Origin: Glycera tridactyla
Taxonomy: Eukaryota
Direction of reading: 5' to 3'
Assembly: GCA_965644265.1 (NCBI GenBank)
Contig: OZ286475.1
Location: 23,250,001-23,314,000, forward strand
Length of the DNA: 64,000 bases
Made by a program: the position numbers and the translations under genes. The notes beneath the pieces were generated by a model. It saw nothing but the letters and a program-made list of their open reading frames with translations, had not been told where the DNA came from and made no database searches. Numbering within the stretch: position 1 is the first letter of the stretch; every line of letters starts with the position of its first letter. Shown here piece by piece: positions 8,398-53,513 of this stretch.

Positions 8398-11224
8398 TAC
8401 ACACCAAGGTCCCTGATACACACTCATCTACAAATGTGGTGAGGCAGTGCGAATCAAATCCAATTTTTGTTCATCTGGCAGCCAATTGATGGAGTGCATA
8501 TTTCTTCCCTGAAAATCACAATTCGAACTTGTTACTATGGTAAAAGTATGGAATTTGATGGTCAGAAGTCTGTTTGAAGCTCAAGTGCATGTTCCCTGGA
8601 TTAGCACAAACCATTAGCCAATTAACCAGGGTCTAAAGCTTTTCTTATTTGGTTGAAGACATAGCCAAACAGGCTAGAGAAAATTTGGCTGGAGCACAGA
8701 AAGACAGGGCATATATGTACATGCTCTCTTACAGCTCGTGGAGCCATGATGAATATGATTGGGGGTTGGAGAATGGATTTCTCATGTCTGGAAAATGATA
8801 CTCCAGTTTGAAATGAAAGTGATGGCCAAATTGCAGTATTTCCTAAATGTTTCTGGCATGAATGATTTAGCTGCTTTAGCCAAACTTGCTATGGGAAATG
8901 ATGAAGGAATATGGATCCTTTATGGGGAAATATTGTTCTAGCACCAATCAGTCTGTAGTGCACTGTTTCATACTTTTACAGCCATGCTGTTGGAATGGTA
9001 AACAGGACCGCAGATGACCCTAGATTTGACAGTCAACTAACATGGCCAACTCATGAACAGTTGCATTGTCCGCCCCTCACCAGCTGACCCCCTCTCTCAC
9101 TATTGAAGGGGGTGGGGTTTGTGACCTACATTCACAGCCGCTACACAACCAGAAACTCAGACCAGGGTTCTTTTATTAATATTTGAGCTCAAACCTGGAA
9201 GCTATATGTTTCAGAACTGATATTGAGTTTCAACTCAAATTTCAAGTCATTTTGACTCGATTGACGTAATGTCACATGTATACAGTCAAACCTGTCTATT
9301 GAAGCTACCTTCGGTTGGATCAAAAAGGGGACATTTACTGTTGAAATAAATATCACAGTTGCAGCTCAGGGTGACCTTCGTAGGCAGCAATGCTTGCTCT
9401 CCATAAAACAGTGATAATTTATTGTAAAATGTCCTCAAATGTTTGAGCAGCAATGTACATTTCTGTAGGATAAAAAACATTTTAGTGAGTGATTTTAGCA
9501 AAATGGAAATAGTTTTAGCAATTAGGAAAGCACTTTGTAGAAATTGAAAATCATTTCATTGTATCAGTCACTAAGTTGAAAAATGAATGGCTTTTTTTAT
9601 GCCAGATCAGTTTTTGGTGCATTTTCCCACCAAAGCAAATTAAATGAGCAAGATGATCATCTACAATAAACCACCACCACCACCTTCGTGCCATCAAGAT
9701 GGAGTATTACTCTAGCAAATCATTTTAGCAAATTAGATTTCTCTTTAGCATTCATCACTACTGATTATCTACATGGATAGTTAAAAAGCCAATCTATAAA
9801 GGAAACCCAGTTATGCCTAATTTATAGGGGTTTAGGACAGAGCTGAAAACCATGAGCCCACATATGCAAAATTCATCGTTTATATAGACACTCCAACATT
9901 TTTCAGCAATACTGCTACAGCCTGGAGCATGGTTACACATTACTTATCAGCTCAACTTGATTGGTGGACTATGGATGATGGATATCGCAGCTAATGAGTA
10001 GTCTGGGGTTCATAGCTGCCCTGCTGATGTGGACACTATGAGTGATCGAGAGTTCAATCAAGGTGACTCACTAACAAATTGGGGGTCTCCTGACATGTAA
10101 TTAATTTCCTACTGTAGTTGTATGTCAGTGAGATACATTGTCATCCTCATCATCATGTCCAGGGTTTGCCCAGGTCCGGGAAGTGCCTTCAAATAGCCCT
10201 GGACTTTGAAAATACAGTCAAACCTCTCTATGAAGACCGCCTTCGGTCGCATAAAAAAGTGGCCTTTATTTGGAGATGGTCTTTATAGAGAGGCCATTTA
10301 CTGTTGAAAATACTACCACGGTCGCAGCTCAGGGTGGTCTCTATAGCGAGGTGGTCTTTATGGAGAGGTGGTCTTTAGCCCTTGCCTTGAAAGTGCCTTG
10401 GAACAGCCTTGAATATGCCTACCATGAAGTCAGTACTGCATTGAAGCTAATGGTGAAGATGCCTGTGTTTTGTTTTGTTTTGTTTATTTCTTTAATTTCT
10501 TTTGTCGCCATACGGTAACAGAAAATACTTGTGACATGTGATCAACATAGATAGATAGAAGGGGGCCCAGTATGGATCTCTGCGAGGCTCCACAGTTTAT
10601 GTTTCTTTGATNNNNNNNNNNNNNNNNNNNNNNNNNNNNNNNNNNNNNNNNNNNNNNNNNNNNNNNNNNNNNNNNNNNNNNNNNNNNNNNNNNNNNNNNN
10701 NNNNNNNNNNNNNNNNNNNNNNNNNNNNNNNNNNNNNNNNNNNNNNNNNNNNNNNNNNNNNNNNNNNNNNNNNNNNNNNNNNNNNNNNNNNNNNNNNNNN
10801 NNNNNNNNNNNNNNNNNNNNNNNNNNNNNNNNNNNNCTAGTGTCATTCATACTATTACACTATGATAGTCACACGAAATATCGCTTCATCTCCAACCTCG
10901 AAGACCATCCCCTACTCAGAAAAATCAACTGAACATCAAGTTGCTCTCAGAGGGAGGGCAATTATTACTGCTGAGGAAATGACAGATGTTACTGCAGAAG
11001 GTCAGTGGTTTCTGGTGGATAATTATTCATTAGGTCTTGAAAATCAGTGAAGAGGCTTTTAAATACATTAAATTTTTTAATCACACAGATGTCTTGAACG
11101 ATATAGGAAAACTTCATCTGGACCAAATCCACCAAGATTCTGTATGGTATCTGGCAATCTGACGATGTAATGTATCAGAGAAATTGACCCATTGTCTGAA
11201 CGTATTTTGTTTTGTCTGTTTCAG

Positions 11225-11279
11225 GTATGTACAGTGTTGATAGTTTTGTGATGAAAATAATATGGTTGGCAGGAATGAG
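11225..11279 (+). other. Candidate recursive splice site plus 55-nt cryptic exon
   Basis: tctgaac-gtattttgttttgtctgtttcag|GTATGT, then downstream donor GAG|GTGAGT. Confidence 0.45.
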
Positions 11280-11336
11280 GTGAGTCCTGTAAGACTCCAT
11301 CTCCAGGTTTTCAGCTTTTGCCCTATTTGTGAATTA

Positions 11337-11713
11337 CAGGGAAACCTGTGACAATAGACAGGGATGTGATTGTTCCACGACCCATGGATTTCCGGGTTTT
11401 ATGTTGATTATTTCGGATTTTAGATCATGAAAATCGCACCAGTATTAGTGGAGATAGAGCACATAGTTCATATCCAGTCATAGTAGCCATCAAATCGCAC
11501 TTGTGGGGGTTTCTTGGTCCACAAATTCCCGGTGAAAAGCGCCTCTGGTAAGGTTTTCAGTAATCTTGGTTGTGGGCCAATCACATCCCTGCAATAGAGC
11601 ACCATAAATGTCAGCAATATGTATTCTCTCAAGAGAGGTGTTCGCCTGTGGGAGGTATATTTGACTATGTCAAAGCGGATTTCTGTATAGGTCTCTTGTC
11701 AGAGGTTTCACTG
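11337..11713. mobile_element. Tc1/mariner-type MITE (B2) carrying a nested family A copy
   Basis: TA|CAGGGAAACCTGTGACAA ... TTGTCAGAGGTTTCACTG|TA. Confidence 0.75.
11359..11591. mobile_element. Family A MITE with 7-bp TSD
   Basis: TIR CAGGGATGTGATTG/CAATCACATCCCTG; CAATAGA duplicated at 11352-11358 and 11592-11598. Confidence 0.9.
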
Positions 11714-12585
11714 TAATCCTTAATACACACTTGCCCATTTACTTAAATGTTCTTGCCCACCCTATTCATGAGTTGGTATGGCCAGAGACCTATACAAGGT
11801 CCCTGGTATAGTCAATGGTATATGGCATAATCAATCTGCAATCATTTTGAGAATGCNNNNNNNNNNNNNNNNNNNNNNNNNNNNNNNNNNNNNNNNNNNN
11901 NNNNNNNNNNNNNNNNNNNNNNNNNNNNNNNNNNNNNNNNNNNNNNNNNNNNNNNNNNNNNNNNNNNNNNNNNNNNNNNNNNNNNNNNNNNNNNNNNNNN
12001 NNNNNNNNNNNNNNNNNNNNNNNNNNNNNNNNNNNNNNNNNNNNNNNNNNNNNNNNNNNNNNNNNNNNNNNNNNNNNNNNNNNNNNNNNNNNNNNNNNNN
12101 NNNNNNNNNNNNNNNNNNNNNNNNNNNNNNNNNNNNNNNNNNNNNNNNNNNNNNNNNNNNNNNNNNNNNNNNNNNNNNNNNNNNNNTTGCCTTGCATTAT
12201 ATCAGTATAGTTGCAGTGTTCAGAAAGTCTCATACCCGGTAGATGAGAGAGCCGGTCCCCGGTCCCTGTGTAACCATGTGTCATGCTTGAGCGGGACAGC
12301 CCGCCGGCGATTTATGCCAAATAAGCTGACTTCATATGGACAATATTCATGAGTGCAGCCCTTCGAGAGTTCACACTTGCAGAGCCTCATCAGGAGACAA
12401 ATGTGTGGCGTTAGTGTGGGGTCAGCAGATATGCTTATAGGGGTCAGCCACGGGTGAGCAATGCCATCATCTGCCAGCGTCCACTGCTGACCAGCCACGC
12501 AAATATGCCTCACATACATCCTTATTTCATCTGGTAATGTGATGCTGGCTCTGACAAAAACACTTACCTATACTGCTGCTGCTGG

Positions 12586-13010
12586 AGAGAGAGAGAGTGT
12601 GTGTGTGAGACAGACAGCCAGACAGACGGATGGATTGACAGACGGACGGACGGACGGACGGACGGACGGACAGACAAAGACAGACAGACAGACAGACAGA
12701 CAAAGACAGAGAGGAGAATTGAGACAGAGACTAAGACAGAGAGAGTAGAGACAGACAGATAGACAGACAGACAGAACGAGAAACAGACACACATAGAAGA
12801 AACAGAGACAGAGCCAAAACAAAGAAAGAAGAGAGAGAGACAGAGAAGAGAGGCAGACAGACAGGAACAGACAGAGACAAAGACAGACAGACAGAGGCAG
12901 ACACAGACACTGACAGAGACGAGAAGCAGAGACAGAGACCAAGACAGAGAGAGAAGCGAGAGGCTGAAACAGAGACAAAAAGAGAGTGAAAGAGAAGAGA
13001 GACAAAAACC
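12586..13010. repeat. Purine-rich compound microsatellite (GA)n/(GACA)n/(GACG)n
   Basis: Directly visible; source of the spurious 155-189 aa ORFs. Confidence 0.95.
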
Positions 13011-52800: not shown

Positions 52801-52868
52801 CTTCAAAAATGCAACAATCCATGCATATGACAGAAAAGAGCATTTTGTGCTGATTATTTTGAATTTTA

Positions 52869-53040
52869 CAGTGATGCTAATTCCCCGAAAATTTTCGGAA
52901 ATCCGAAAATTTGGTGAAAATTCCAATGCCAAAATTTTGTTGGTAGTTTCAGAACTGATACCTTTGACAGTATGTGGGGGCAGTTTCAGAAAATGCCGCA
53001 ATATTTCCAAAAACTTGGCTCCATCTCATTGACATCACTG
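52869..53040. mobile_element. Family H MITE (CAGTGATG TIR), 6-bp TSD
   Basis: CAGTGATGCTAAT ... ATTGACATCACTG; ATTTTA duplicated at 52863-52868 and 53041-53046. Relatives at about 33140-33268 and 34090-34255. Confidence 0.8.
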
Positions 53041-53113
53041 ATTTTAGATAATGAAAATCAGACCAGATTTGGTGTAGATAGAGCCCAAAGTTTGTATGGA
53101 GTTATAGTAGCCA

Positions 53114-53343
53114 CATAGAGATACATGATATGTACAGTAAAACCTGTCTTAAGTGAAAAGTCATGGGACCAAATTTTTCTTCCACTTAAGACAGGATTTT
53201 GCTTAGCGCAGGACTATTATAGTGAGAAAAAAAACATCCGGGCAGACCGTGGGGTATGTGCTTAAGACAGGATTTCACCTAGCACAGGTTTACACTCAAG
53301 CTGGTTTCACTGTACATGATATGTATAACCATGTATCTCTATG
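53114..53343. mobile_element. Tiny hAT-like element (14-bp TIR, 8-bp TSD) carrying a family C Tc1 MITE at 53135-53312
   Basis: CATAGAGATACATG/CATGTATCTCTATG; flanks AGTAGCCA/AGTAGCCG. Confidence 0.75.
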
Positions 53344-53445
53344 AGTAGCCGTTAGTCAGCAGTTGTTGGGCTTCCTTGCTGTAATGTGATTATAAGCATG
53401 GTATACTGCAGTGTCTAATGTGAAATGTTTGTTTGTATTTTGTAG

Positions 53446-53513
53446 GTGAGTTTTGATGTGCTGGTCAGTGATGTGGTTGCAACGATTACCCGATTATATC
53501 GATTATTGCATCG
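53446..53513 (+). other. Candidate recursive splice site
   Basis: Branch point-like ctaat about 28 nt upstream, tgtttgtttgtattttgtag|GTGAGT; downstream donors at 53464 (GTCAGT) or 53514 (GTGAGA). Confidence 0.5.

What the first reader, a model, noticed from the sequence alone, without database searches (positions are those of the whole stretch)
11190..53513. Three plus-strand zero-length-exon (ratchet) junctions suggest recursive splicing of a giant intron
Seen: at 11224/5, 39621/2 and 53445/6 a strong acceptor (branch point-like motif, U-rich tract, YAG) abuts a strong donor (GTATGT, GTGAGT, GTGAGT). Each is followed 18-68 nt later by another donor, giving cryptic exons of 55, 38 and 18 or 68 nt. 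All three are on the plus strand and 14-28 kb apart. On reading the minus strand I found no equally clean junction. Known: this 3'SS|5'SS plus cryptic-exon design defines recursive splice sites in very long introns of Drosophila and vertebrates. Inference: the window lies inside a very long plus-strand gene of an invertebrate that splices recursively, which to my knowledge is poorly documented outside those groups.
Basis: partly seen in the sequence, partly recalled or inferred. Interest (0 to 1): 0.7.

Follow-up and report, generated by a model that had tools for sequence, protein, structure and literature searches.

The report
Candidate stepwise-splicing sites, mollusc non-coding stretch
Three spots on one strand of a gene-free, repeat-rich stretch of mollusc DNA carry the full signal set used in flies and vertebrates to remove very long introns in steps; they are unlikely to be chance, but no RNA data could show that they are used.

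Summary

- **Ranking:** a generic splice-site matrix ranks them 1, 2 and 3 of 517 AG|GT sites on both strands.
- **Core motif alone:** YAGGTRWGT occurs at chance frequency (5 seen, 4.3 expected).
- **Full design:** acceptor tract, junction and a second donor 15-80 nt downstream occur 3 times on plus and 0 on minus. Simulations expect about 0.05 per strand.
- **Strong donors:** all three AG|GTGAGT on the plus strand belong to these cassettes.
- **Context:** each cassette lies in unique DNA between repeats. The window shows no coding signal (40 ORFs without a Pfam hit). A mild T>A, G>C skew fits plus-strand transcription.

Use in splicing is unproven. The only four public runs cover repeats alone, no host exon lies in the window, and conservation could not be tested. 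Same-strand order rests on scaffolding across unread gaps.

Sites 2 and 3 look like classical skipped ratchet points. Site 1 looks more like a 55-nt exon that would be included.

The scan noted similar sites on other pieces of this genome, also without RNA proof. My verdict is a plausible new member of a known kind, of moderate interest.

The parts
11196..11224 (+). Site 1 acceptor: branch-point-like CTGAA (11196-11200), T/G-rich tract, CAG
   Evidence: sequence. Acceptor score 7.9, the highest among AG|GT sites on either strand. The 20 nt before the CAG are 75% pyrimidine.
11225..11279 (+). Site 1 cryptic exon of 55 nt that begins with the donor GTATGT
   Evidence: joint-best exon candidate in the window (score 15.7). 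The length is not a multiple of 3, and stops occur in 2 of 3 frames.
11280..11285 (+). Site 1 downstream donor GAG|GTGAGT
   Evidence: score 7.8. A donor this good falls in a +15..+80 window at 0.2% of positions. It is stronger than the ratchet donor.
39590..39621 (+). Site 2 acceptor: CTGAT branch-point motif (A at 39593, 28 nt upstream), tract, CAG
   Evidence: Acceptor score 3.8.
39622..39659 (+). Site 2 cryptic exon of 38 nt that begins with the donor GTGAGT
   Evidence: full donor score 8.8, the best donor on the plus strand; length is 2 mod 3; the flanking bin 39422-39621 has zero depth in runs that cover only repeats, so this is not a high-copy repeat.
39660..39665 (+). Site 2 downstream donor CAG|GTAACA
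   Evidence: score 3.0, null P 0.07. It is weaker than the ratchet donor. A SINE-like repeat starts about 35 nt further on, near 39695.
53415..53445 (+). Site 3 acceptor: CTAAT branch-point motif (A at 53418, 27 nt upstream), T/G-rich tract, TAG
   Evidence: Acceptor score 4.6.
53446..53513 (+). Site 3 cryptic exon that begins with GTGAGT: 18 nt to GTCAGT (53464) or 68 nt to GTGAGA (53514)
   Evidence: downstream donors score 3.0 and 3.4 (null P 0.056), both weaker than the ratchet donor; 68 is 2 mod 3.
53514..53519 (+). Site 3 distal downstream donor TCG|GTGAGA

Best explanation
The three sites are real, selected splice-signal cassettes on the plus strand, of the recursive-splicing type. Each has an acceptor fused to a donor (a ratchet point), a short out-of-frame cryptic exon, and a second donor that lets the spliceosome define that exon.

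The inferred mechanism is as follows. A long plus-strand transcript crosses this coding-free, repeat-rich stretch. An upstream exon is first spliced to the AG at each site, which rebuilds a donor (exon|GTGAGT). That rebuilt donor is then used to remove the next segment.

At sites 2 and 3 the rebuilt donor is stronger than the downstream donor, so the cryptic exon should be skipped and leave no trace in mRNA. At site 1 the downstream donor is the stronger one, so the 55-nt exon is more likely included, at least sometimes, as a frame-shifting, poison or untranslated exon.

Shown here: the sequence design, its excess over chance, and its strand bias. Inferred: transcription, the host intron, and actual use in splicing.
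For: - **Ranking:** the sites rank 1-3 of 517 AG|GT junctions on both strands with a generic matrix and with fly-like or shorter-tract variants.
- **Junction excess:** Markov simulations expect 0.2-0.4 junctions this good per strand against 3 seen.
- **Acceptor-donor coincidence:** on the real sequence, 3 of the 12 AG|GT sites with a good donor core also have a top-1.6% acceptor. Binomial P is 0.0008 and permutation P is 0.003; the minus strand has none.
- **AG|GTGAGT:** all three plus-strand copies belong to the cassettes.
- **Downstream donor:** null P is 0.002, 0.07 and 0.056 for the three sites, a feature not used in the ranking.
- **Full cassette:** 3 on plus, 0 on minus, 0.05 expected, and no simulation of 400 reached 2.
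- **Branch point:** a CTRAY motif is present at 2 of 3 sites against a base rate of 0.106.
- **Cryptic exons:** lengths of 55, 38 and 68 nt are near the roughly 50 nt, mostly out-of-frame RS-exons of Drosophila (PMC8605326).
- **Unique DNA:** each cassette lies in unique DNA within about 70 nt of a repeat edge.
- **No coding content:** no period-3 signal and no Pfam hit in 40 ORFs.
- **Base skew:** T>A in 23 of 32 two-kb bins and G>C in 22 of 32. The G+T excess is positive in 8 of 10 inter-gap segments, including the three that hold the sites.
- **Exon-like pairing:** plus-strand donors pair with a good acceptor within 300 nt in 10 of 15 cases, against 2 of 10 on minus.
Against: - No RNA evidence of any kind. 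The four runs found are unlabelled, hold 5-7% of the words, and cover only repeats.
- No host gene or flanking exon was found, so the stretch could be intergenic.
- The 9-mer core occurs at chance frequency and the looser consensus does too.
- The score thresholds were set at the observed values, and the matrices are generic values from memory, not trained on this species.
- The pyrimidine tracts are short and interrupted by G. With a 30-nt tract window, sites 2 and 3 fall to rank 7-10.
- The window was chosen from a very large scan, so some such triples are expected by chance scan-wide.
- The same-strand arrangement depends on scaffolding across unread gaps, and site 1 is on a 1-kb piece.
- Donor strength at site 1 argues against a zero-length exon there.
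Confidence: 0.5

Rival explanations
1. The sites are chance look-alikes. The sequence is 62 kb long, T- and G-skewed and full of TTTG-like tracts, so it yields a few acceptor-like tracts next to GTRAGT. A reader scanning hundreds of thousands of windows picked out a lucky triple.
For: The core YAGGTRWGT is at chance level, 5 seen against 4.3 expected. The 16-mer consensus with 2 mismatches gives 14 seen against 14.9 expected. AGGT itself is commoner on plus (289 against 229) because of base skew. Thresholds were chosen after the fact and the matrices are generic. The tracts are weak by fly standards.
Against: Three independent layers point the same way: acceptor-donor coincidence, the downstream donor, and the branch-point motif. 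The full cassette is about 60-fold over simulation and absent from the minus strand. With 564 windows of this genome noted so far, the expected number of chance triples at that rate is far below one.
Confidence: 0.25
2. The sites are ordinary small exons, not recursive intermediates. They would be untranslated, alternative, poison or long non-coding RNA exons of a plus-strand transcript. Examples are 11225-11279, or a 251-nt exon at 53195-53445 that ends at the GTGAGT donor. The GT at the exon start, or the AG before the donor, would then be incidental.
For: Exon 11225-11279 is the joint-best exon candidate in the window, and its own donor is stronger than the GTATGT at its start. The donor at 53446 can also pair with an acceptor 251 nt upstream that scores 4.6. 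Other plus-strand exon-like units exist, such as 38917-39005 and 7225-7280.
Against: An exon that starts with GTRWGT by accident is expected about once in 1,000 exons (my own calculation), yet all three units have this start. At sites 2 and 3 the donor at the exon start is the strongest donor nearby. None of the units has protein-coding character.
Confidence: 0.2
3. The arrangement is an assembly artefact. One or more contig pieces are mis-oriented or misplaced, so the three sites do not lie on one strand of one transcription unit.
For: Seven N gaps lie between the sites. Site 1 is on a 1,020-nt piece between two gaps. No repeat copy bridges any relevant gap.
Against: The G+T skew has the same sign on the three pieces that carry the sites and on 8 of 10 pieces of 1 kb or more. 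Each cassette is intact within its own contig piece, so the local design does not depend on the scaffolding.
Confidence: 0.05

Closest known systems
Drosophila intronic ratchet points with cryptic RS-exons (Hatton 1998; Burnette 2005; Duff 2015; Joseph 2018; Pai 2018; Joseph and Lai 2021, PMC8605326; PMC6110457)
   Same: Both have a juxtaposed acceptor|donor at AG|GT and a short cryptic exon of about 50 nt that is out of frame and closed by a second donor. At sites 2 and 3 the ratchet donor is stronger than the cryptic-exon donor. Several sites occur in a row on one strand, in long non-coding DNA. Segment lengths are of the same order: 14-28 kb here against a mean of 9.1 kb in fly.
   Different: The pyrimidine tracts here are short and interrupted by G, and the donors are GTGAGT or GTATGT rather than GTAAGT. 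The host intron is not identified, and there is no RNA or conservation evidence. Site 1 has the reverse donor-strength order. The phylum is different (Mollusca).
Vertebrate RS-exons (Sibley 2015; Blazquez 2018; as summarised in PMC8605326 and PMC6110456)
   Same: Recursion depends on exon definition, and the outcome depends on competition between the rebuilt donor and the RS-exon donor. Included RS-exons act as poison or alternative exons, which fits site 1.
   Different: Most vertebrate cases are expressed exons, and only a few are fully suppressed intronic sites. Expression is unknown here.
Computational RP-site excess in long introns of non-drosophilid invertebrates (Shepard, McCreary and Fedorov 2009, PMC2773006)
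   Same: Both rest on a sense-over-antisense excess of AG|GT ratchet-type motifs, inferred from sequence alone, in invertebrates other than flies (mosquito, bee, beetle, sea urchin).
   Different: That study counted sites in annotated introns genome-wide. This is one window without annotation. That study included no mollusc.
Earlier notes of this scan on other pieces of the same genome (for example s1-302949, s1-333353)
   Same: They describe ratchet-type junctions in giant introns of the same mollusc, also without RNA proof.
   Different: Those notes describe a downstream U1-type site with AT in place of GT that cannot be cut. No AGATRAGT lies near the three sites here; the downstream donors here are true GT donors.

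Membership tests
Recursive splice site (ratchet point with RS-exon) | Acceptor (tract + YAG) directly abutting a consensus donor (GTRAGT-like) at AG|GT | tested here: met
   the three sites are the top three of 517 AG|GT junctions. The tracts are only moderate.
Recursive splice site (ratchet point with RS-exon) | Downstream donor that defines a short cryptic exon of about 50 nt | tested here: met
   donors at +55, +38 and +18/+68, with null P of 0.002, 0.07 and 0.056. The design is described in PMC8605326.
Recursive splice site (ratchet point with RS-exon) | Ratchet donor stronger than the cryptic-exon donor, so that the exon is skipped | tested here: inconclusive
   met at sites 2 and 3 (GTGAGT against GTAACA, GTCAGT or GTGAGA). 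Not met at site 1 (GTATGT against GTGAGT). The -3..-1 bases of the rebuilt donor depend on an unknown upstream exon.
Recursive splice site (ratchet point with RS-exon) | Cryptic exon out of frame or non-coding | tested here: met
   55, 38 and 68 nt are not multiples of 3, and stops occur in one or two frames. Only the 18-nt option is a multiple of 3.
Recursive splice site (ratchet point with RS-exon) | Lies inside a long intron of an expressed gene, on the sense strand | tested here: inconclusive
   No exon or host gene was found in the window. The T>A and G>C skew is consistent with plus-strand transcription but weak, with P about 0.02-0.05.
Recursive splice site (ratchet point with RS-exon) | Excess on the sense strand over the antisense strand and over random expectation | tested here: met
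   3 against 0, with 0.05 expected; permutation P 0.003. The numbers are small, this is one window, and the thresholds were set after the fact.
Recursive splice site (ratchet point with RS-exon) | RNA intermediates: exon-to-ratchet junction reads, sawtooth coverage, segment lariats | not testable with these tools
no run on record as RNA. The four runs found cover only repeats, with zero depth at 39422-39621.
Recursive splice site (ratchet point with RS-exon) | Strong evolutionary conservation of the AG|GT core | not testable with these tools
   No related mollusc genome is reachable. Exact-pattern scans of metagenome contigs for the cores of sites 2 and 1 gave 0 hits.

The most novel reading that the evidence does not exclude
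Recursive splicing through short cryptic RS-exons operates in a mollusc. Together with the known cases in flies and vertebrates, that would make the mechanism an ancestral bilaterian way of processing giant introns, not a trait of two lineages. Site 1 would then be an example where donor competition is tuned towards inclusion.
Probability: 0.4. Interest if true: 0.6.

Novelty: new member of a known kind. Interest (0 to 1): 0.4.

Why it matters
Recursive splicing has been shown experimentally only in Drosophila and vertebrates. For other invertebrates there is only a motif-count study (PMC2773006). A full-text search found no paper that links recursive splicing with molluscs.

Many mollusc genomes have very long introns in neural and developmental genes (my own knowledge). 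A confirmed set of ratchet cassettes would extend the mechanism to Lophotrochozoa and give concrete sites to test.

As it stands, this is a well-formed, statistically supported prediction rather than a demonstration. It is also one of several like it that the scan has already noted in this genome.

Tried and rejected
- **RNA evidence:** The look-up of sequencing runs failed twice. It then returned four unlabelled runs holding 5-7% of the words. Laid on 36622-42621, these cover only interspersed repeats, so they say nothing about site 2.
- **Host gene:** no long ORF with coding character. No period-3 signal apart from trinucleotide repeats. No Pfam hit in the 40 longest non-repeat ORFs. No Rfam family in the window. 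The costly protein searches were not used because there was no credible coding query.
- **Conservation:** two exact-pattern scans of metagenome contigs gave 0 hits.
- **Shared repeat origin:** rejected. The cassettes match neither each other nor any intra-window repeat.
- **Simple motif enrichment:** rejected. The core motif is at chance level.
- **'Splice-dead AT U1 site' design from earlier notes on this genome:** not present here.
- **Gap continuity:** no repeat copy bridges a gap, so this remains untested. No gap was filled or looked up.
- **Neighbouring windows:** looking at the scan's notes beyond this window is not possible.
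Full report
**What is in the sequence**

- Site 1 reads ...tattttgttttgtctgtttcag|GTATGT at 11224/5, followed 55 nt later by GAG|GTGAGT.
- Site 2 reads ...gtatgttcttgtgttgcag|GTGAGT at 39621/2, followed 38 nt later by CAG|GTAACA.
- Site 3 reads ...gtttgtttgtattttgtag|GTGAGT at 53445/6, followed by CTG|GTCAGT at +18 and TCG|GTGAGA at +68.

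Sites 2 and 3 have a perfect CTRAY branch-point motif 27-28 nt upstream: CTGAT at 39590-39594 and CTAAT at 53415-53419. Site 1 has only CTGAA. The pyrimidine tracts are moderate: 60-75% pyrimidine over 20 nt and interrupted by G.

**Gaps**

The window has twelve N runs, and seven of them lie between the sites. None touches a cassette. Site 1 lies on a piece of only 1,020 nt (10837-11856) between two gaps.

I looked for repeat copies that bridge a gap colinearly and found none at the relevant gaps. Order, orientation and the 28.4 and 13.8 kb spacings therefore rest on the scaffolding alone. I did not fill or look up any gap.

**Is it more than chance?**

The bare core is not. YAGGTRWGT occurs 5 times on both strands against 4.3 expected. 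A 16-mer consensus with two mismatches occurs 14 times against 14.9 expected.

The picture changes when the parts are scored together. I used a generic acceptor (tract plus YAG) and donor matrix, with values recalled from memory of human and fly consensus, not trained on this species.
- The three sites rank 1, 2 and 3 of 517 AG|GT junctions on both strands, scoring 13.6, 12.6 and 11.3. The best minus-strand site scores 10.4.
- The ranking holds for 15- and 20-nt tract windows and for a fly-like matrix. With a 30-nt tract window, sites 2 and 3 drop to rank 7-10 because the tracts are short.
- Markov simulations of the plus strand expect 0.19-0.40 sites at 11.3 or more. P(3 or more) is 0 of 150 at order 1, 0.007 at order 3 and 0.013 at order 5.
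- On the real sequence, 3 of the 12 plus-strand AG|GT sites with a good donor core also have an acceptor in the top 1.6% of all AG. Binomial P is 0.0008 and permutation P is 0.003. The minus strand has 0 of 11.
- The plus strand has exactly three AG|GTGAGT, and all three belong to the cassettes. Two are the junctions of sites 2 and 3, and the third is the donor that closes the 55-nt exon of site 1.
- The downstream donor, which was not used in the ranking, is unusually good at all three sites. Empirical P is 0.002, 0.07 and 0.056 for the best donor at +15..+80.
- Full cassettes (junction at 11 or more, with a downstream donor at 3 or more) number 3 on plus and 0 on minus. Simulations give a mean of 0.05 per strand, and none of 400 reached 2.

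There are caveats. The thresholds sit at the observed values, the matrices are generic, and the window was picked from a very large scan. Scan-wide, a few such triples could arise by chance. Within this genome's 564 noted windows, the expected number is well below one.

**Surroundings**

The genome is a mollusc's, according to earlier notes of the scan.

Repeats:
- About 24% of the window repeats within itself, mostly a SINE-like family.
- None of the cassettes lies in a repeat, and they are not similar to one another. Each sits in a unique island with a repeat edge within about 70 nt.

Coding and RNA content:
- I found no coding content: no long credible ORF, no period-3 signal except at trinucleotide repeats, and no Pfam hit in the 40 longest non-repeat ORFs.
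- No Rfam family matches.

Strand signals:
- The plus strand has T>A in 23 of 32 two-kb bins and G>C in 22 of 32, each with a mean skew of about 0.03. The G+T excess is positive on 8 of 10 pieces of 1 kb or more, including the three with the sites.
- In mammals such a skew marks the sense strand of transcribed DNA (my own knowledge). Here it is weak, supportive evidence only.
- Plus-strand donors are paired with a good acceptor within 300 nt more often than minus-strand donors, 10 of 15 against 2 of 10. This also hints that plus is the spliced strand.

**RNA**

This is the decisive evidence, and I could not obtain it. One run search is allowed. After two machine failures it returned four runs of one study. 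They are unlabelled ('RNA?' is a guess) and hold 5-7% of the words of 35007-43421.

I laid them on 36622-42621, which is 6,000 letters. They cover only the interspersed repeats, at 90-95% likeness and depths of 10^3-10^4. The unique DNA, including 39422-39621, has zero depth.

This shows that site 2 is not part of a high-copy repeat. It says nothing about transcription.

**How it most likely works**

The design matches the published fly model. That model has a ratchet point, a cryptic RS-exon of about 50 nt that is usually out of frame, and a downstream donor. The outcome is set by competition between the rebuilt ratchet donor and the RS-exon donor (PMC8605326). Fly introns can hold up to seven sites, with mean segments of 9.1 kb (PMC6110457).

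By that rule, sites 2 and 3 should be classical skipped, zero-length sites, because GTGAGT at the junction outcompetes GTAACA, GTCAGT or GTGAGA. Site 1 has GTATGT at the junction and GTGAGT downstream. It should therefore tend to include its 55-nt exon, which shifts the frame and has stops in two of three frames. That points to a poison, alternative or untranslated exon with a recursion-capable 5' end.

All of this is inference from sequence.

**Rivals**
- **Chance:** about 0.25.
- **Ordinary small non-coding or untranslated exons of a plus-strand transcript:** about 0.2. For example, site 3's donor can also close a 251-nt unit at 53195-53445.
- **Scaffolding artefact for the same-strand arrangement:** about 0.05.

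**Comparison with what is known, and novelty**

A sequence-only excess of ratchet motifs in long introns has been reported for several insects and a sea urchin (PMC2773006). A full-text search found no paper that connects recursive splicing with molluscs.

The scan itself has at least seven earlier notes of the same kind on other pieces of this genome, none with RNA proof. Some of those describe a downstream U1-type site with AT in place of GT. That variant is absent here.

I rate this as a plausible new member of a known kind. It is moderately interesting and needs RNA data.

Noticed in passing
window 53483-53700; also 42639 and 48367: There is a cluster of ATCGATTA motifs just downstream of site 3. 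Four of the window's six copies fall within about 170 nt, against about 1 expected in the whole window, and they are arranged as short direct and inverted repeats. The two other copies lie in a repeat pair, 42.47-42.67 kb and 48.20-48.39 kb, which is 80% alike over 200 nt. This could be a small foldback element or a cluster of binding sites.
   Followed up: partly
window 8236, 10333, 13760, 28106, 39805, 55802, 59673, 59749 and others: A SINE-like interspersed family carries a 17-nt unit (GGTGGTCTTTATAGAGA) repeated about 2.6 times. It occurs in both orientations, with at least ten copies in the window. In the four public runs it has depths of thousands.
   Followed up: partly
window 38917-39005 (+) and 7225-7280 (+): Two further plus-strand exon-like units have a good acceptor and donor (89 nt with scores a6.2/d6.4; 56 nt with a5.1/d5.5) and stops in all frames. 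They could be cryptic or poison exons, or chance.
   Followed up: no
window 38275-38601, 49322-49866, 34258-34830, 56033-56324: Several tandem arrays are present: a 34-nt unit x 9.6, a 20-nt unit x 27, a 293-nt unit x 2 that abuts a gap, and a 108-nt unit x 2.7.
   Followed up: no
window 32373-32720 (-): Two (ATA)n trinucleotide arrays produce the only strong period-3 signal and a spurious 198-codon ORF at 32300-32896. This is not a gene.
   Followed up: yes
runs X1-X4, laid on window 36622-42621: The four runs guessed to be RNA behave like low-coverage genomic DNA of the same or a close species. Repeats are at huge depth. Only one near-identical unique contig was seen among the pieces the tool listed (40644-40893, depth 2.2), and most pieces were not listed.
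   Followed up: partly
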